Virus record (IMG/VR): IMGVR_UViG_3300009034_000001 | Coordinates: 177,415-241,414 of that record | Reading direction: 5' to 3' (one strand) | DNA: 64,000 bases | In this document: one piece after another, positions 12,170-64,000 of the stretch | How the letters are laid out: every line of letters starts with the position of its first letter | Numbering within the stretch: the first letter of the stretch is position 1 | The notes under the pieces: model-generated | What the model saw: the letters and a program-made list of their open reading frames with translations, nothing else | The model's database searches: none | What the model was told of the DNA's origin: nothing | Translations under genes and position numbers: made by a program

Positions 12170-12246
12170 TGGTGGAGCCAGCGGGATTTGAACCCACATT
12201 GCAGGCTTGAAAGGCCCGCGACCTGACCGGATTAGTCGATGGCTCC
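12170..12246 (-). tRNA. tRNA-Glu (anticodon TTC), CCA encoded
   Basis: Full cloverleaf: GGAGCCA/TGGCTCC acceptor, GACT/GGTC D-stem, CGGGC-CTTTCAA-GCCTG anticodon arm, GTGGG-TTCAAAT-CCCGC T-arm, ACCA end. Confidence 0.95.
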
Positions 12247-12688: not shown

Positions 12689-13429
12689 TTACTTTGTCAA
12701 TAAGGCATTCGTTCCAACCTTGACAATTCGGCCACCCTGTTTCTTAAACTCGTTTCGGATGTAAAGTGCGAGTTGATTCCTTACTTTCCTCTTGTCAATC
12801 TTATAACTACTTAGTTGTGAAATCAACTCCTGTGTAAAATCTCGAAGCGCTTTCGTATCTCCGGGGTCCAATGAGTTTATCAACTTTGTAACTTCATCTT
12901 TCACCCAAGAACTCACGTACTCATCCTTCTTACGCATCGAACTCTTTGTACCTTTCATGCGCTTCTTTCCCTCATGATCCCTCACAATGTTGTTAAGTTT
13001 CTGAAGTACCATTTTAGTAACCTCCCGTGTAAGAAATTCCCCTTTATTACGATCCAATTCGGGGTAACCATGAATCCTCGCAAAAGCATTCGCTGATGAC
13101 TCGGTAATAGATTTCTTATTACGTTCAAATGTAATTTTATCCGCTGACCAATCAGCAAAATGACCTAATTCATGTAGAAATACTAAACCTAAATCGTTAA
13201 ATCTAACTGGACAAGGAACGCGCAAAATTATTAATCCATTACAATCAAACATCTCTCCGTACTTAACCAAGATTTGGCTAGGGCTAAATTGGCCAGAACA
13301 TCTAATTGAACGAGCATGTTTCAAATAAACAATCAACCCTTTTTTTGACAACACAACCTTCGAAGATATGTCTCTTAGAAAAAATACAATCAACTCATTT
13401 GGAAACCTGGACTCATTAATAACTTTCAT
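12689..13429 (-). CDS. HExxH metallopeptidase-like domain fused to a family D domain
   Basis: FLHELGHF motif; C-terminal 107 aa align with family D; internal GGAGGT and in-frame ATG at 13012. Confidence 0.7.
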   Translation of the reverse strand: MKVINESRFPNELIVFFLRDISSKVVLSKKGLIVYLKHARSIRCSGQFSPSQILVKYGEMFDCNGLIILRVPCPVRFNDLGLVFLHELGHFADWSADKITFERNKKSITESSANAFARIHGYPELDRNKGEFLTREVTKMVLQKLNNIVRDHEGKKRMKGTKSSMRKKDEYVSSWVKDEVTKLINSLDPGDTKALRDFTQELISQLSSYKIDKRKVRNQLALYIRNEFKKQGGRIVKVGTNALLTK

Positions 13430-53588: not shown

Positions 53589-53930
53589 TTACTTCGTCAA
53601 GTAAGCACGGTTACCCACGCGGATTATCTGGCCGCCGTCGATCTTCTTGTACTCATTCCGGATGTACAGCACGATTTGGTTTGTGAACTTCTTCAGGTCA
53701 CCTACCTCGGCTGTGTCCAATGTTGCTACCACCTCATCGGCAAAGTCTCTCAGCTGCACGGCATCGCCATCTTCCATCCGATTCCACAGAGCCTTTACTT
53801 CGGCCCTGACCTTTGTGGAAGTACAATTCTCGAAGTTTCTCTTGGAACCGTTTTTGGATTCGCGGGCCTCAACCTGCTCTTCGTGATCCTTGACAACCTC
53901 GTCCAATTTTTTGAATCCGTTCTCTGCCAT
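53589..53930 (-). CDS. Family D protein (possible winged helix)
   Basis: FKKLDEVV..HE...ST.VR.EVK...GD.VQLRDF...LYIRNE...GG.I.RVGNRAYLT. Confidence 0.8.
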   Translation of the reverse strand: MAENGFKKLDEVVKDHEEQVEARESKNGSKRNFENCTSTKVRAEVKALWNRMEDGDAVQLRDFADEVVATLDTAEVGDLKKFTNQIVLYIRNEYKKIDGGQIIRVGNRAYLTK

Positions 53931-54289: not shown

Positions 54290-55695
54290 GTAGGTATAAT
54301 AAATGTCCTTTATAATTTCATACAACCAACCTCGATTTCTTGCACAAGATTCAATAACTCATTACCTCACTATTTTAATTTGAACCTTTTGGGCCCGAGT
54401 AACCTAACACCAAGGTTTAAAACCCATCTGGCAAATAAACTTAATAGTAGGACAACCGTTGTGCCAAATTAGTTTTCCGGATGGATAAATGCCAAGCCCA
54501 GCTTCAGCAGAGAACAGTACATACTTATCAACATCTGGACAATAACCAACGATACAATAGTTTTCCTTATGTCCAGAAGCTATTTCACAATCGAAGTCAA
54601 CGCCAATTGAAATAGCTAATACATTGCCAGTTCTATCCTCAGCCCGGAATATCTCAGGTTTGGACCTTGGGAACTGCTTAGTCAAGTCTTCAGCCAATCG
54701 TCCTATTGCTTGTTCTGCACTCTTTAACGACACTATTCTCACCTCCTCTTAACCGTACTTCCATACATTGGCTAACTCATTAAGTTGTTTAGCCAGAACC
54801 TGCATAGCATCCCAAACAATCCTTGGTTCGTGAGTATTGTGTTTCTGAAACCACACAACCCAATCCGTCAGCTGTTCGGCAACCAGGACACCCTTGTCCT
54901 CACGTAAAGAATCGCTTAACTTTGGATGCTTCATTAGTTTAGAGAACTTGTTTATGCCGGGTATCATAACTACACCTCCTCTTCATCATTTTCTTCTCCC
55001 GGAGTTAATACACCTTCATGTTCCAATTGAGCTTTCAGGTTTGACAATGATTCATCAAGTTCCTGTAAAACTACTGACTTACCCTTTTTAATCATATCAT
55101 CAATATCGGGTAACTTAATCTCTTCTGACATGATGTGCACCTCCTTGCTTATCTGTCTTTATCTTATGGCACTTGTAACACCTAATCCAATCCGGGTGTT
55201 CTTCTTCATGACGTTTCTTCAAGAACCCGCCACAATCAATACACGTCTTTGTTTTACTCAGTTCATTATATGGGTAGCTCTTCTTTGGCATACTTTCTCA
55301 CCTCCTTTTTTCGTTAACCTCCCATACATGTAATCTCTGACCACCAAGGCCTGTATAAGCCGAAAGTATCACTATTGTTTTCAAGCCGATACATTTCGGT
55401 CTGCCAACATATATAACCCAACCAGCTCTCTTTGCCCTTGAATCTCCCTCCCCATAGTATTTATCCACATGGTAAGTTGCATTTCCAATTTTAGTCAACA
55501 ACCCAACTTCTTTCCAACTGTCTCTCAACTGACGAGCAAGTTTTAGATTCCGTGTGGTGAGCGTGTATAACTCATTACACACAGCAATTAAAAAATGTAC
55601 ATCCTGTTGAAAATTCTCTCTTCCTGTCCTCATAGCTTTAAACCTCCTTTTTTATATCCCCCTCAATTAATTTTTTTAGTTAAATTGTTTAATAT

Positions 55696-56444: not shown

Positions 56445-56939
56445 TTAATCACCTCCTTTATTACTTATTATTGTTTCTATCACTCGTGATACTTCCAAAA
56501 TGCATCGCTTCCATAACTCGGGATCCTTATACCCATGGAGATAGTTAATTTCAACGCTCCCATGTACGCCCTTTTTCCTTCCGGTCAATTCGCTCGGGAA
56601 GATTGACAACTGAACCGAAGCAACGCTCAGTAAACAGTAACGGCTTTGATTAAACGGAAATTGTTTACATACAGTCAAAAACCTAGTTAGCCTATTCAGA
56701 TCCACAGTAAAATTCACCCATGTTGGCCCTCGGTCCTCGCAATCAGGATGCCCCCAACAGCTAGCAAATGTTCTACAGCCAGGTAACTTGTTCATTGTTT
56801 GAACCAACTGCAGTATTTCTGGATCCATTGATACACCCCTAGTGTATAATCCCAATTTCTTCACCTCCCTTTCTTTAATTGATTTTTGTGTCTGGAAGCA
56901 AGTCAGCCATACTTTTAATCTCAATAACTTTTCCTTCAA
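56445..56939 (-). CDS. Protein with D..I..LV..N...T..SC.GH motif (TYW3-like; paralog of 19539-20048)
   Basis: MDPEILQLVQTMNKLPGCRTFASCWGH. Confidence 0.5.
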   Translation of the reverse strand: MKEKLLRLKVWLTCFQTQKSIKEREVKKLGLYTRGVSMDPEILQLVQTMNKLPGCRTFASCWGHPDCEDRGPTWVNFTVDLNRLTRFLTVCKQFPFNQSRYCLLSVASVQLSIFPSELTGRKKGVHGSVEINYLHGYKDPELWKRCILEVSRVIETIISNKGGD

Positions 56940-57677
56940 CTCTCAGGTCTCTAAGCGCCTTCACATATAGCACTTCCTTCTGGTACGGAACCATGCCCTT
57001 CTTGGTCTTCCGCTGTCGGGTCACTGTATACCTAATCCCATGAATATCTTTACAATCGTCGCACTGGAGAAAATCAATGTAACCTTGTTTGTACGGATTG
57101 TAAGTCCTGCCCTTTGATGGCTTCCTCAACTCATAAGGCTGGAAGACCACTTGAGTAACTCTTTTCTCCTGTTTACAGAAATTACATCTTGCATGTAGCA
57201 CGTTACCACCTCCCTTTATTTGCAGCCACACCCGATTGTTGACTCACACCCTGGTTTGAATTCAAAGGTATGGTCACAACAGTATTGTTTAATGTAAGCA
57301 TCATCCATGGACGTAAGGGTATTCCTTAACTTTTTCAACCCTTCCACTAAATCCTCGTCCGAGGATAGAAACCAGCTCACTTCAAGCCAGCGTTGCCCGT
57401 TTGTTTCTTTGATCCCTCTTTTAAGGATCCAACTTAGTGCTGCTTCCCTCTGGTCATTCATGAAAACTGACCTGCAGTATGGACACTTACTTGATGCCTC
57501 TGCGCCACATTTTTTACAATGACAGTTAGCCATGATATCACCTCCCCTCTTTACTTACTTTTTTGTTTGTAGTCTTTGTTGCCTGGAACCTCATTACTTC
57601 GTTCCTCACTTTAAAGTTTGAACCTTTTTTCGTTGTTTTGGGTGCCCCCTCTCCGGAGGCACCCGCACGAGTCAGGT

Positions 57678-58148
57678 CTAGACCGATAAGTACGCACGTG
57701 CACCAACACGCGTGATTGTTCCGCTCAAGCGATTCCACTCATTGCGAACGTACAGGGTCAGACGATCCTTAGTCTTCTTCTCATCCAAGCCACTTGTTCC
57801 CAGTTGGTCATAGAGCGTTCCAACAAACTCGCGCAACTGGATTGTGTCACCAGCACCCATCTCAGACATCAGATTTCTAACTTCAGTCCGTATCCATGTT
57901 GAAACCGCGAACTCATTAGCCTGACCGTTCGAACTAGTTTCGGCATGAGCCTTTTTCTCCTCGTGCTCAACGATTACGTCTTCTAGTTTCCTAAACATTG
58001 ATATCACCTCCTTTTTCCCCCACACCTTGGTGGGTATATTTTTTTCCTCATAACACTGTCCAATCTTTTTGTAAGGACAGTTGGGACACCCACACCGATC
58101 CACTCGCCCGTACCTCTCAAAAATCTCTTCCTCGTACCTACAACCCAT
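57678..58148 (-). CDS. Family D protein (core start 57998; optional Cys-rich N-terminal extension)
   Basis: Family D motifs; GGAGGT and in-frame ATG at 57998. Confidence 0.8.
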   Translation of the reverse strand: MGCRYEEEIFERYGRVDRCGCPNCPYKKIGQCYEEKNIPTKVWGKKEVISMFRKLEDVIVEHEEKKAHAETSSNGQANEFAVSTWIRTEVRNLMSEMGAGDTIQLREFVGTLYDQLGTSGLDEKKTKDRLTLYVRNEWNRLSGTITRVGARAYLSV

Positions 58149-58273
58149 TCTTTATTTTTCCTTCCCCTGGGTCCGGCACCGCATCCGGATCCTCCTTTAC
58201 CGGTTTTTTGTTGCATTCCTTCGCCGTGTGTAGGGGGAACCTTTTACAGTCCCCCCACCGGGTCAAGTCCTAC

Positions 58274-58726
58274 TTAAATTGTCAAAAAGGCTCTGGAACC
58301 TACCCTGACAATCCTTCCACCCATGTCCTTCCAACAATTCCTTATATAGAGGACCATCCTGTCGTCCAATTTCTTTCTTGGAATTGTTGTTGAACCTTCC
58401 ACCTGGTCCGTGAGTCCTGAGCTAAAATCCCTCAATTTAATACACTCACCTTCCACCAGGTTTCCTAAAAGTACCTTACACTCATTCCGGACCCAAGTAC
58501 TAACATATTCACTTTGGTCCTTGGTCGTGCCATTTCCCTGGACAACCTTTTTGTCCTCATACTCCCGGACAACGTCGTCCAATTTTTTAAATGTGTTTTC
58601 CATAGTCCCGTCCTCCTTTTTATTTGGATTTTGGTGTCCCTGCAATAAGTTTTCCATGTCCCCTCCTTTTTCGGGCCCGTTTATATTTTTTTGTCCGGAC
58701 CCAATTTTTTTATTCCACCTTAACAT
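58274..58726 (-). CDS. Family D protein with three nested in-frame starts (58726, 58657, 58603)
   Basis: Family D motifs; each ATG is preceded by its own SD-like sequence. Confidence 0.8.
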   Translation of the reverse strand: MLRWNKKIGSGQKNINGPEKGGDMENLLQGHQNPNKKEDGTMENTFKKLDDVVREYEDKKVVQGNGTTKDQSEYVSTWVRNECKVLLGNLVEGECIKLRDFSSGLTDQVEGSTTIPRKKLDDRMVLYIRNCWKDMGGRIVRVGSRAFLTI

Positions 58727-58779
58727 TTAATACCTTCCTTTTATTTTATTATAATATATTTCCCCTATGAACGTCCGGA

Positions 58780-59100
58780 GAGTTATCCGACAACGGATAT
58801 AGAACCTTACCTCTGTACCTCTAACTGTAGAATTAGATCTATATCTCTAGACGTATAGTCAAGATGGATTCTATAGGCATTTAATATATAATAGACTGCT
58901 ATATAGTCTAAAACTATAGTTAACTCTAAGACTCTAGAGATCATTGTATCTATAACTCTTTTACTAAGGATTTCTTATTACTTATGTAGAATTGATATAG
59001 CGGATATCTATATAGATATGGAGTAGAATAAGGATCTACTATACTAGACTCTTTATATAGCATCTCTCTGGGAACTAAGCTTTCCCTTAAGCTTTCTTTC
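58780..59100. other. Long AT-rich noncoding block enriched in TAG/CTA and short palindromes (candidate terminus, pac site or origin)
   Basis: No ORF; about 30 TAG/CTA triplets in about 280 bp (hand count); 16-bp palindrome at 59004-59019. Confidence 0.5.
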
Positions 59101-59348: not shown

Positions 59349-59726
59349 TTAGTCTTCATCTAGCATATAAATATACTGTCGTGCGATTTCACATAGAGCA
59401 ACAAATACAGCATCTTTATCACGTTCAAGCTGTCCTAACTCGATATACGGAACGAGGTCGGGGTGTGTCTTTTTTTCACGGCTGTATTCCACTCCGTACA
59501 CCCACCCCATTGTAAAATATGCCTGCATCCAGCTTCCGTGTAGCTCTTCTGGCGAGCGAGAACGCTGCTCTCCACACTGTCGCTCTATCACTTCACGGAA
59601 CTGTGCCTTGAATGACTCTTCACGTTCGTCCCATAGCACTGGTATTACTGGAGCATTTGCAGATTGTGCTGCTAGCCTTGCAGCATCGTACACAAACCTT
59701 GCTCGTCGCTCAATTAGTTCTTTCAT
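59349..59726 (-). CDS. RyR-domain protein
   Basis: H.SWM......GW.YG.....KKTHPDLVPY.EL...E..KD. Confidence 0.8.
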   Translation of the reverse strand: MKELIERRARFVYDAARLAAQSANAPVIPVLWDEREESFKAQFREVIERQCGEQRSRSPEELHGSWMQAYFTMGWVYGVEYSREKKTHPDLVPYIELGQLERDKDAVFVALCEIARQYIYMLDED

Positions 59727-63436: not shown

Positions 63437-64000
63437 TTAAGTGGCTATCAGTTTTTTGAACCCCTCTTCGTTTAATATCTTGACACCCAGTGTCTTTGCC
63501 TTCTCAAGCTTGGATCCAGCTTCTTTACCTACCACTACGAAATCGGTCTTACGACTAACCGAAGAACCAACCAAACCTCCCAACCCCTGAACTATACGTC
63601 TGGCCTCGTCTCTGGTAAAAGACTCTTGTTTACCGGTAAACACAAAAGTTTTGCCCAAAAGTGCAGATTTAATAGCCACTACTTTCTTTTCCTTAACAAT
63701 CTCCACGCCTGCTTTAAGTATCCTTTCTATGATATTTAAGTTGTTCTTATCTTTAAAAAATCCCACTACACTCTTGGCAACCTCTGGTCCTATCTCTTCA
63801 ATGGTCATAAGTTCCTCTTCTCCTGCCCTAAGTGCCTTTATACCCGCGAAATTATCTGCCAATACTTGGGCCACATGCCCGCCCACATGGCGGATTCCCA
63901 GAGCATATAAAAACCTGCCTAAGGTGGTCTTTTTGCTCCTTTCGATGGCCTCCATGATGTTTTGGGCAGACTTCTCAGCCATGCGCTCTAGATTGGCCAG
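63437..64000 (-). CDS. ligA: NAD-dependent DNA ligase, C-terminal HhH and BRCT part (5' end outside the window)
   Basis: LERMAEKSAQN...RFLYALGIRHVG...IGPEVA.S...GKTFVFTG...VSRKTDFVVVG..AGSKL.KA..LGV. Confidence 0.95.
   Translation of the reverse strand: MANLERMAEKSAQNIMEAIERSKKTTLGRFLYALGIRHVGGHVAQVLADNFAGIKALRAGEEELMTIEEIGPEVAKSVVGFFKDKNNLNIIERILKAGVEIVKEKKVVAIKSALLGKTFVFTGKQESFTRDEARRIVQGLGGLVGSSVSRKTDFVVVGKEAGSKLEKAKTLGVKILNEEGFKKLIAT

What the first reader, a model, noticed from the sequence alone, without database searches (positions are those of the whole stretch)
58249..58776. GTCC/GGAC motif saturation inside and around the candidate first early gene
Seen: about 20 GTCC/GGAC tetramers in about 530 bp (hand count; roughly 2-3 expected from composition), in both coding and leader DNA, several as GGWCC or CCGGAC. 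The same core forms the promoter box. Inference: an array of protein-binding or modification sites superimposed on a gene, such as an autoregulatory sink, an entry or packaging signal, or restriction/methylase decoys on first-injected DNA.
Basis: partly seen in the sequence, partly recalled or inferred. Interest (0 to 1): 0.62.

Follow-up and report, generated by a model that had tools for sequence, protein, structure and literature searches.

The report
GTCC box array recoded into phage gene
One small gene of a 241-kb sediment phage, with its promoter and tail, carries about ten times more copies of the four-letter word GTCC/GGAC than expected, written in through synonymous codon choices, so it most likely serves as a landing pad on the DNA for a phage protein, but no relatives exist to prove this.

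Summary
The interval 58249-58776 holds exactly 20 GTCC/GGAC. The genome mean is 2.4 per 528 bp (sd 1.7), and the next best window has 10, inside a protein tandem repeat.

The array is written at synonymous sites. The 150-codon gene at 58274-58726 (minus strand) has 17 copies against 2.9 expected from its protein sequence and genome codon usage. It uses 17 of 28 possible positions. Codons outside the motif are ordinary. Four paralogs lack the motif.

GGAC and its reverse complement GTCC are the top two of 256 tetramers and are enriched about equally (5.8x and 6.3x). This points to recognition on duplex DNA rather than on mRNA.

- The gene product models as a winged-helix domain with a basic recognition helix and wing.
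- A perfect palindrome GTCCGGAC sits in the leader, and GTCCGG abuts the -35 region.
- Directly upstream lies the genome's longest non-coding stretch, with a second unique array of 15 CTATA/TATAG.

Best reading, by inference: a cis-acting array of protein-binding boxes at the phage's main control region, acting as an operator and possibly as an origin. The "first-injected DNA" idea has no support, because the contig is a circular assembly. Nothing supports the restriction-decoy idea. No relatives exist anywhere searched, so conservation cannot be tested.

The parts
58171..58780 (.). GTCC/GGAC box array: 21 copies (16 GTCC and 5 GGAC on the + strand), irregularly spaced. It covers the promoter edge, leader and whole CDS of gene A and about 100 bp past its stop.
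   Evidence: No periodicity was found. No extended consensus beyond a frequent GG after GTCC.
58274..58726 (-). Gene A, a 150-codon ORF. In-frame starts with strong AAGGAGG ribosome sites lie at 58657 and 58603. The C-terminal 109 residues form the conserved 'family D' domain, modelled as a winged helix.
   Evidence: sequence; paralog alignment; model (pLDDT 76, core above 90); fold matches; basic helix 3 plus wing, pI 9.8-10.9.
58693..58700 (.). Perfect palindrome GTCCGGAC (two boxes head to head) in the leader. One of only three copies in the genome.
58743..58780 (-). Sigma-70-like promoter: -35 TTCATA at 58771-58766, -10 TAAAAT at 58748-58743, and also TATAAT at 58753-58748. A GTCCGG box (58773-58778) abuts the -35 hexamer.
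   Evidence: consensus match only; no transcript data
58702..58761 (.). A 60-bp stretch of 83% A+T between the two arrays, in the top 0.02% of the genome.
58797..59065 (.). Second array: 15 CTATA/TATAG pentamers, several as CTATAG or CTATATAG palindromes, in non-coding DNA without the usual strand skew. It is part of the longest non-coding stretch of the genome (58727-59348).
   Evidence: genome mean 0.49, sd 0.85, next best 5
58233..58256 (-). G/C stem-loop (GGGGGA...UCCCCC) just after gene A's stop, containing one box. There is no U-tract after it.
57678..58148 (-). Paralog B, the next gene downstream. Its winged-helix domain is at 57678-57998, and there is a possible Cys-rich N-terminal extension. 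It has no motif excess (4 observed, 3.7 expected).
53589..53930 (-). Paralog D (113 aa). No motif excess.
12689..13429 (-). Paralog C (246 aa; the family D domain is at the C-terminus). No motif excess.

Best explanation
The locus is a cis-acting array of short protein-binding boxes (core GTCC, read on duplex DNA in either orientation). The array has been written into the promoter, leader, coding sequence and 3' flank of a small phage gene by synonymous recoding.

The most likely reader is a phage winged-helix protein, and the obvious candidates are the gene's own product and its four paralogs. In this model, the best sites are filled first: the palindrome GTCCGGAC in the leader and GTCCGG at the -35. 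The roughly 20 weaker single boxes then let the protein coat about 600 bp cooperatively. This would shut down or tune the transcription unit that starts here. Together with the adjacent A+T-rich stretch and the CTATA/TATAG array, it would build the phage's main nucleoprotein control region.

Shown: the enrichment, its synonymous origin, its orientation independence, its uniqueness in the genome, and the winged-helix model.

Inferred: that a protein binds the boxes, which protein it is, and what the complex does.
For: (1) Selection acts on nucleotides, not on the protein.
- 17 boxes in the CDS against 2.9 expected under codon resampling, 0 of 20,000.
- 61% of all synonymous opportunities are used.
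- Codon bias is confined to the motif codons.
- The paralogs at 40% identity lack the motif.
- Gene-wise z is 8.2 against a next best of 3.2 among 425 genes.

(2) The target looks like duplex DNA.
- Of 256 tetramers tested without bias, GGAC (z 7.5) and its reverse complement GTCC (z 5.3) are the top two.
- Their fold enrichments over the codon-based expectation are nearly equal: 12 against 2.08 and 5 against 0.80.
- Boxes continue outside the CDS, including one beside the -35.

(3) The layout resembles an operator. A perfect palindrome of two boxes sits in the leader, GTCCGG boxes flank the promoter, and TCCGGA occurs four times against 0.19 expected.

(4) The encoded domain models as helix-strand-helix-helix-hairpin. 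Nearly all top structural matches are winged-helix domains. The recognition helix (LY[IV]RN) is the best-conserved segment across the paralogs, and helix 3 plus wing is strongly basic.

(5) It is a single-locus element. There is no second island and no GTCCGGAC at other promoters, which suits a cis-acting site rather than a regulon.

(6) There is precedent. The TP228 parH/OF region holds 20 degenerate 4-bp boxes in both orientations that ParG coats cooperatively, and it serves as both operator and centromere (PMC3130281).
Against: - There is no binding data of any kind.
- A 4-bp core carries very little information, and no extended consensus or helical phasing was found.
- Winged-helix domains also mediate protein-protein and RNA contacts, and the structural Z-scores (up to 7.5) are only middling.
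- A simple autoregulatory operator does not need about 20 sites spread through a CDS.
- The family exists only in this one phage, so neither the array nor the protein-site pairing can be checked by covariation.
- The mRNA also folds better than shuffles (z = -4.55), so an RNA-level role is not excluded.
Confidence: 0.42

Rival explanations
1. Replication origin. The CTATA/TATAG array, the A+T-rich stretch and the GTCC array inside an adjacent winged-helix gene together form the phage's ori. This would follow the known pattern of origins lying inside or next to the initiator gene, such as lambda ori in gene O (my own knowledge). It overlaps with the best explanation, because the boxes would still be protein-binding sites.
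For: - The two strongest non-coding word islands of the genome lie side by side, at the longest non-coding stretch.
- A 60-bp stretch of 83% A+T lies between them.
- GC skew at fourfold-degenerate sites switches somewhere in 235-241 kb, and the locus is at 235.6-236.5 kb. A second switch lies near 76-96 kb. The sign fits an origin at the former (about p = 0.01 by block shuffles).
- Some nearest predicted-structure clusters carry Pox_D5/SF3-helicase-associated winged helices (TM about 0.5, weak).
- No lambda-O-type initiator or DnaA above the cut-off was found elsewhere in the genome.
Against: - The skew breakpoint is broad and could reflect early against late gene classes rather than replication.
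- Known iterons are longer, more alike and regularly spaced.
- No helicase, primase or loader gene is adjacent.
- Five paralogs of a 109-residue domain is odd for an initiator.
Confidence: 0.2
2. RNA-level signal. GGAC words in the mRNA could be targets of a sequence-specific endoribonuclease or RNA-binding protein, or they could pair with GUCC words to fold the transcript. Either way they would control the stability or translation of this first transcript.
For: - The sense strand carries most copies (GGAC 16 of 21).
- GGA as a whole is about three times enriched: 40 against 13.5.
- The 521-nt RNA folds at z = -4.55 against shuffles.
- Four of the five GUCC pair with GGAC in the minimum-energy fold.
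- There is precedent for a cleavage word that is unusually abundant in one mRNA: S. aureus MazF, UACAU and sraP (reference 19 of PMC7470975).
Against: - GUCC is enriched by the same factor as GGAC, although an RNA reader of GGAC has no use for it.
- The numbers are unbalanced for pure pairing (12 against 5 in the CDS).
- Complementary words will pair in any prediction.
- One box lies upstream of the predicted transcription start.
- There is no Rfam match, and the phage has no CsrA.
Confidence: 0.15
3. Modification or restriction-related cluster. The boxes would be sites of a host or phage DNA methyltransferase, another modifying enzyme or a nuclease, clustered to time or mark this region. The precedent is the GATC clusters at E. 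coli oriC and the P1 pac site (my own knowledge). A variant is that the cluster acts as a decoy.
For: A short word, either orientation and irregular spacing are what enzyme sites look like. TCCGGA, GGWCC and CCGG sub-words are also enriched.
Against: - The word is not avoided or otherwise unusual genome-wide (O/E 0.87 and 0.94), and palindromes are not avoided.
- No N6/N4 or C5 methyltransferase domain was found in the phage.
- No enzyme with this specificity turned up in the literature search.
- I know of no precedent for decoy function.
Confidence: 0.08
4. Packaging (pac) or DNA-entry signal recognised by the small terminase or the ejection machinery.
For: Pac sites of several phages are arrays of short repeats inside a gene (my own knowledge). 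The assembly is circular, as expected for a permuted, headful-packaged genome.
Against: - The only terminase-like match is weak and lies 132 kb away.
- The gene has four paralogs and no oligomerisation domain typical of small terminases.
- The contig ends say nothing about the physical ends.
- No read data cover the array.
Confidence: 0.07
5. No function. The array would be a by-product of a mutational quirk, a recent transfer from a genome with other codon habits, or an assembly artefact.
For: There is a single genome, no relatives and no expression data.
Against: - Third-position composition outside the motif codons equals the genome's, so foreign codon usage is excluded.
- Enrichment is specific to one word and its complement.
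- The same 6.45 kb occurs identically on a second contig of the metagenome.
- I know of no mutational process that creates a non-palindromic tetramer in both orientations and in all three codon phases.
Confidence: 0.05

Closest known systems
TP228 parH/OF centromere-operator bound by ParG (PMC3130281)
   Same: About 20 degenerate 4-bp boxes, in direct and inverted orientation, with orientation largely irrelevant. The array lies at and upstream of the promoter of the genes concerned, is coated cooperatively by a small DNA-binding protein, and serves as operator and as a higher-order assembly site.
   Different: Here the boxes are irregular, spread over about 600 bp and mostly inside a coding sequence. 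The candidate reader is a winged helix, and the phage has no ParA-type or tubulin-type motor.
Origins embedded in or next to the initiator gene, such as lambda ori in gene O and iteron plasmids with an autoregulated rep gene (my own knowledge)
   Same: Binding sites are superimposed on the coding sequence of a winged-helix DNA-binding protein, an A+T-rich stretch lies adjacent, and inverted sites at the promoter allow autoregulation.
   Different: Iterons are 17-22 bp, few in number and nearly identical. Here the core is 4 bp and occurs about 20 times. The protein is only about 110-150 residues and has no detectable similarity to any initiator family.
GATC clusters at E. coli oriC and in the P1 pac site (my own knowledge)
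   Same: A tetranucleotide is over-represented roughly tenfold in a few hundred bp at irregular spacing, marking a unique cis-acting locus.
   Different: GATC is palindromic and is read through methylation state. Here the word is non-palindromic, and no methyltransferase was found.
mRNA enriched in a ribonuclease word: S. aureus MazF, UACAU and sraP (cited in PMC7470975)
   Same: One transcript carries an unusual excess of a short word.
   Different: That signal is strand-specific at the RNA level. Here the reverse complement is equally enriched.

Membership tests
Winged-helix DNA-binding proteins (product of gene A and its paralogs) | A helix-strand-helix-helix-hairpin topology, with helix 3 as the recognition helix. 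| tested here: met
   AlphaFold2 model, pLDDT 76 with a core above 90: H34-48, E54-56, H57-71, H76-93, E97-101, E104-108. Nearly all top Foldseek and VIA matches are winged helices, at E 0.02-0.4 and Z up to 7.5.
Winged-helix DNA-binding proteins (product of gene A and its paralogs) | Sequence membership in a curated family. | tested here: not met
   No Pfam or PHROG hit. The exhaustive profile search finds only this phage's own five copies.
Winged-helix DNA-binding proteins (product of gene A and its paralogs) | Actual binding to DNA, and specifically to GTCC. | not testable with these tools
   There is only indirect support: a basic helix 3 plus wing and conserved Arg-Asn in helix 3.
Iteron-type replication origin | Several near-identical direct repeats of about 17-22 bp with helical phasing. 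| tested here: not met
   No extended consensus around the boxes and no significant periodicity.
Iteron-type replication origin | An A+T-rich unwinding element adjacent to the repeats. | tested here: met
   58702-58761 is 83% A+T, in the top 0.02% of the genome.
Iteron-type replication origin | A strand-skew switch at the site. | tested here: inconclusive
   The breakpoint in fourfold-site GC skew falls somewhere in 235-241 kb (about p = 0.01). It is broad and confounded with gene class.
Partition centromere (parS/parH/tubC type) | A cognate motor gene (ParA, ParM or TubZ) in the replicon. | tested here: not met
   No AAA_31 (ParA-type) or tubulin-family match in the 98%-complete genome. ParM was not tested.
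Restriction or methylation target cluster | The word is avoided elsewhere in the genome, or a cognate methyltransferase is present. | tested here: not met
   O/E is 0.87 for GTCC and 0.94 for GGAC, and palindromes are not avoided. There is no N6_N4 or C5 methyltransferase domain. Other methyltransferase families were not tested.
CsrA/Rsm-type GGA sponge RNA | Many GGA words presented in single-stranded loops of one RNA, together with a CsrA partner. | tested here: inconclusive
   GGA occurs 40 times in 620 nt against 13.5 expected. However, about half of the GGAC words are paired in the predicted fold, and the complement GUCC is equally enriched. There is no Rfam match and no CsrA in the phage. 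The host is unknown.
pac site within a small-terminase gene | The site lies in or beside the terminase genes. | tested here: not met
   The only terminase-like match (13 bits, below the cut-off) is at genome 103.7-104.2 kb, 132 kb away.

The most novel reading that the evidence does not exclude
A phage gene has been recoded at about 60% of its synonymous opportunities so that the gene itself is the assembly platform for its own winged-helix product (a lineage-specific, five-member family). Together with a neighbouring CTATA/TATAG array, it would form a new kind of origin and early-control region, built from about 20 four-base boxes rather than from long iterons.
Probability: 0.25. Interest if true: 0.7.

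Novelty: new variant of a known kind. Interest (0 to 1): 0.55.

Why it matters
Arrays of very short boxes that recruit many copies of a small DNA-binding protein are known from a few plasmid centromeres and operators, where they sit in non-coding DNA. Here the same kind of array appears to have been pushed into a coding sequence until most available synonymous positions were used. That is a clear, measurable case of a second code overriding codon choice.

The array also marks, without any homology, the probable control centre of an otherwise unannotatable 241-kb phage: the early promoter and perhaps the origin. The phage's early genes have no relatives.

The test is cheap. It needs one 600-bp fragment, one recoded control and one 110-residue protein.

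Tried and rejected
**Searches for relatives, all empty**
- Phage GenBank by DNA and by protein.
- IMG/VR by protein.
- Word-indexed protein search (the query itself only).
- Exhaustive profile search of 1.84 billion representatives. It found only the phage's own five paralogs and one spurious repeat protein.
- JGI metagenome contigs.
- Protein-atlas search by features.

**Other contigs and reads**
- The IMG/VR contig found through the DNA polymerase (100% identical, 173 kb) lacks this region.
- A second contig of the same metagenome is identical over 6.45 kb, so it gives no variation.
- The one public study that holds any of the stretch (a sediment metagenome) has only two 200-nt contigs beside the array and none across it. 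The other laid pieces belong to unrelated RyR-domain genes.

**Features tested and not found**
- Periodicity or helical phasing of the boxes: none.
- Longer repeat units: none beyond 10-15-mers.
- A GTCC-containing promoter box shared by other genes. The recurrent GTCC-containing 9-10-mers are protein tandem repeats.
- T7-type promoters in the TATAG array.
- Rfam families.
- General codon optimisation or foreign origin of the gene: rejected.
- Literature searches for GGAC/GTCC as a phage or methyltransferase word: nothing useful.

**Homodimer prediction**
The homodimer prediction for the winged-helix domain gave no verdict (score 0.13, below the mark). It is not evidence either way.

Full report
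**Setting.** The window is the last 64 kb of a 241,415-bp virus record, G000:C1:177415-241414. The record is JGI metagenome 3300009034, contig Ga0115863_1000006, with a CheckV completeness of 98%.
- Almost all genes lie on the minus strand: 242 of 268 ORFs of 100 aa or more.
- G+C is 39.6%, and ribosome sites are of the AAGGAGGT type.
- A head-maturation protease, a family-A DNA polymerase and an NAD-dependent ligase mark it as a large tailed phage.
- Its polymerase is at most 28% identical to any deposited phage.
- The contig ends overlap by 44 nt and the ligase gene runs across them. The record is therefore a circular assembly, and its ends are not physical DNA ends.

**The observation.** The count is exact: 15 GTCC and 5 GGAC on the + strand in 58249-58776.
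- Over the whole genome, 528-bp windows hold 2.39 ± 1.74 copies. The maximum of 20 is here, and the next best window has 10.
- The runner-up windows are tandem repeats inside structural proteins.
- GTCC is the most enriched tetramer of 58160-58780: 16 against 1.64, p = 3e-11.
- Shuffles that keep the local dinucleotide content reach at most 15, against 21 observed.
- All 4-mers and 5-mers were scanned over the genome. Only an acidic low-complexity run in the scaffold/protease gene and the neighbouring CTATA/TATAG island score higher.

**The array is written at synonymous sites.** The ORF at 58274-58726 (minus strand, 150 codons) belongs to a five-member paralog family found only in this phage.
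- Resampling synonymous codons with genome usage gives 2.9 boxes for this protein. The gene has 17, a value reached by 0 of 20,000 resamplings.
- Of the 28 dipeptides where a box is possible, 17 carry one.
- Asp is GAC in 10 of 11 cases (genome 29%), and Val is GTC in 5 of 12 (genome 9%).
- Codons not touching a box have ordinary third-position composition, and the other NNY codons are not shifted. This excludes general codon optimisation and foreign origin.
- The paralogs, 40% identical in protein, carry no excess.
- Among all 425 predicted genes, this one stands alone at z about 8.2, against a next best of 3.2.

**DNA or RNA?** An unbiased codon-resampling test was run over all 256 tetramers. 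GGAC (z 7.5) and its reverse complement GTCC (z 5.3) are the two top words. Their fold enrichments are nearly equal: 12 against 2.08 and 5 against 0.80. The 3:1 excess of one orientation is what the strong strand skew and the available dipeptides allow. Boxes also lie outside the CDS, at 58171, 58249, 58267 and at 58773 beside the -35 hexamer. An equal pull on a word and its complement is what recognition on duplex DNA predicts.

An RNA reader of GGAC would not need GUCC. Pairing of GGAC with GUCC does lower the predicted folding energy (z = -4.55; four of five GUCC pair with GGAC). But the numbers are unbalanced, and complementary words pair in any prediction. I therefore rank the RNA reading lower, without excluding it.

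**Anatomy of the array.**
- There is no consensus beyond the four bases, except that six boxes read GTCCGG.
- TCCGGA occurs four times against 0.19 expected.
- One site, 58693-58700, is the perfect palindrome GTCCGGAC. It is one of three in the genome, and the other two are inside distant genes.
- There is no periodicity.
- The palindrome lies in the leader, downstream of a sigma-70-like promoter (58771-58743), and a GTCCGG box abuts the -35.
- Two ribosome-site-plus-ATGGAAAAC modules 54 nt apart give in-frame starts at 58657 and 58603. The conserved domain begins at the latter.

**The protein.** There are no Pfam or PHROG hits.
- The four-sequence alignment folds with pLDDT 76 (core above 90) as helix-strand-helix-helix-hairpin.
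- Nearly all top Foldseek and VIA-align matches are winged-helix domains: E2F/DP, Cdt1, Z-alpha, SarX, BlaI/MecI, TubR and AspA. The scores are middling (E 0.02-0.4; Z up to 7.5).
- The nearest predicted-structure clusters include winged helices attached to D5/SF3 primase-helicases (TM about 0.5).
- Helix 3 carries the family's most conserved segment (LY[IV]RN), and helix 3 plus wing has a pI of 9.8-10.9 in every paralog.
- This makes the family plausible nucleic-acid binders. It does not show that they bind, or that they bind GTCC.

**The neighbourhood.** Upstream of the promoter lies the longest non-coding stretch of the genome, 58727-59348.
- It holds 15 CTATA/TATAG in 330 bp, against a genome mean of 0.49, sd 0.85 and a next best of 5.
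- Between the two arrays, 58702-58761 is 83% A+T, in the top 0.02% of the genome.
- GC skew at fourfold-degenerate sites can be compared along the genome because all genes share a strand. It changes level somewhere in 235-241 kb and again near 76-96 kb (about p = 0.01 by block shuffles). The sign is that expected if forks leave from the former.
- The locus is at 235.6-236.5 kb. This hints at an origin, but the breakpoint is broad and coincides with the change from late to early genes.
- No lambda-O-type initiator and no DnaA above the cut-off were found.

**What it is not.**
- Not first-injected DNA by any evidence here: the assembly is circular.
- Not a restriction-avoidance or decoy pattern. 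The word and palindromic 4-mers are at normal frequency genome-wide, and no N6/N4 or C5 methyltransferase was found.
- Not a partition site of a known type: no ParA-type or tubulin-type motor.
- Not beside the terminase: the only weak match is 132 kb away.
- Not a regulon motif: there is no second island and no palindrome at other promoters.
- Not an assembly artefact of one contig: an independent contig of the same metagenome is identical over 6.45 kb.

**Best explanation and comparison.** I take the locus to be a cis-acting array of protein-binding boxes on duplex DNA. Its most likely readers are the gene's own winged-helix product or its paralogs. The palindromic and GTCCGG sites at the promoter would act as an operator, and the many single boxes would support cooperative coating of about 600 bp. 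Together with the A+T-rich stretch and the CTATA/TATAG array, this would be the phage's main control region, possibly its origin.

The closest documented analogue is the TP228 parH/OF region. It holds 20 degenerate 4-bp boxes in both orientations, is coated cooperatively by ParG, and serves as operator and centromere, with orientation largely irrelevant (PMC3130281). The present array differs in four ways:
- it is irregular;
- it is about four times longer;
- it lies mostly inside a coding sequence;
- it is paired with a winged-helix protein rather than a ribbon-helix-helix protein, with no partition motor.

It therefore works like such arrays but is not a member of that system. Origins embedded in initiator genes (lambda O, from my own knowledge) share the idea of sites inside the gene of a winged-helix protein, but they use long iterons.

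**Limits.** All functional statements are inference. No relative of the gene or locus exists in any collection searched. No reads cover the array. The homodimer job gave no verdict. The within-genome synonymous test stands in for it, and the result is unambiguous.

Noticed in passing
window 58797-59065: A second unique word island sits directly upstream of the GTCC array: 15 CTATA/TATAG pentamers in 330 bp of non-coding DNA, several as CTATAG or CTATATAG palindromes. The genome mean is 0.49 and the next best window has 5. The region lacks the genome's usual C>G strand skew.
   Followed up: partly
window 63957-64000 and genome 1-44; ligase at window 63437-64000 plus genome 1-1498: The contig ends overlap by 44 nt (43 identical, plus a masked last base), and the NAD-dependent DNA ligase gene runs across the junction. 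The record is a circular assembly, although IMG/VR lists it as linear.
   Followed up: yes
window 58595-58674: Two near-identical modules, AAAAAGGAGG-N5-7-ATGGAAAAC, lie 54 nt apart and give two in-frame Met-Glu-Asn starts (58657 and 58603) for gene A. This suggests two protein isoforms or a duplicated translation start.
   Followed up: no
window 12689-13429, 53589-53930, 57678-58148, 58274-58726; genome 175173-175418 (L009:5001-5543): A five-member paralog family of a roughly 105-residue winged-helix-like domain is found only in this phage among 1.84 billion representative proteins. One copy (C) is fused to an N-terminal domain with an HExxH-like motif (HELGH), and another (B) may carry a Cys-rich N-terminal extension.
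   Followed up: partly
whole genome (fourfold-degenerate sites); breakpoints at about genome 235-241 kb and 76-96 kb: Sense-strand GC skew at fourfold sites is about +0.10 between 76 and 239 kb and about -0.03 in the remaining arc. This could be a replication signal, with an origin near 239 kb, or a difference between early and late gene classes.
   Followed up: partly
window 57624, 55856, 54386 (minus strand): A recurring box, AAAAAAGGTTCAAAC(T)TTAAAGT, lies in three short intergenic gaps of the early region downstream of gene A. It may be a promoter or regulatory element of another class.
   Followed up: no
window 1-64000: The 64-kb window has only one ORF of 250 aa or more and one tRNA (tRNA-Glu, 12170-12246, minus strand). 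It is a dense field of small ORFan genes, many with CxxC pairs typical of zinc ribbons, for example 57216-57533, 56875-57231 and 55115-55291.
   Followed up: no
genome 58.6-59.2 kb (L001), outside the window: The strongest word island of the genome (AGGAA/GAGGA, 24 copies per 500 bp) lies inside the 565-aa head-maturation-protease-like gene. It is probably an acidic Glu-rich low-complexity segment. I did not read the sequence.
   Followed up: no
window 59349-59726: The gene just upstream of the non-coding stretch encodes a RyR-domain protein (Pfam E = 1e-8). Diverged copies of this domain from other organisms are abundant in the sediment metagenome runs, and they account for most of the contig pieces laid there.
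   Followed up: no
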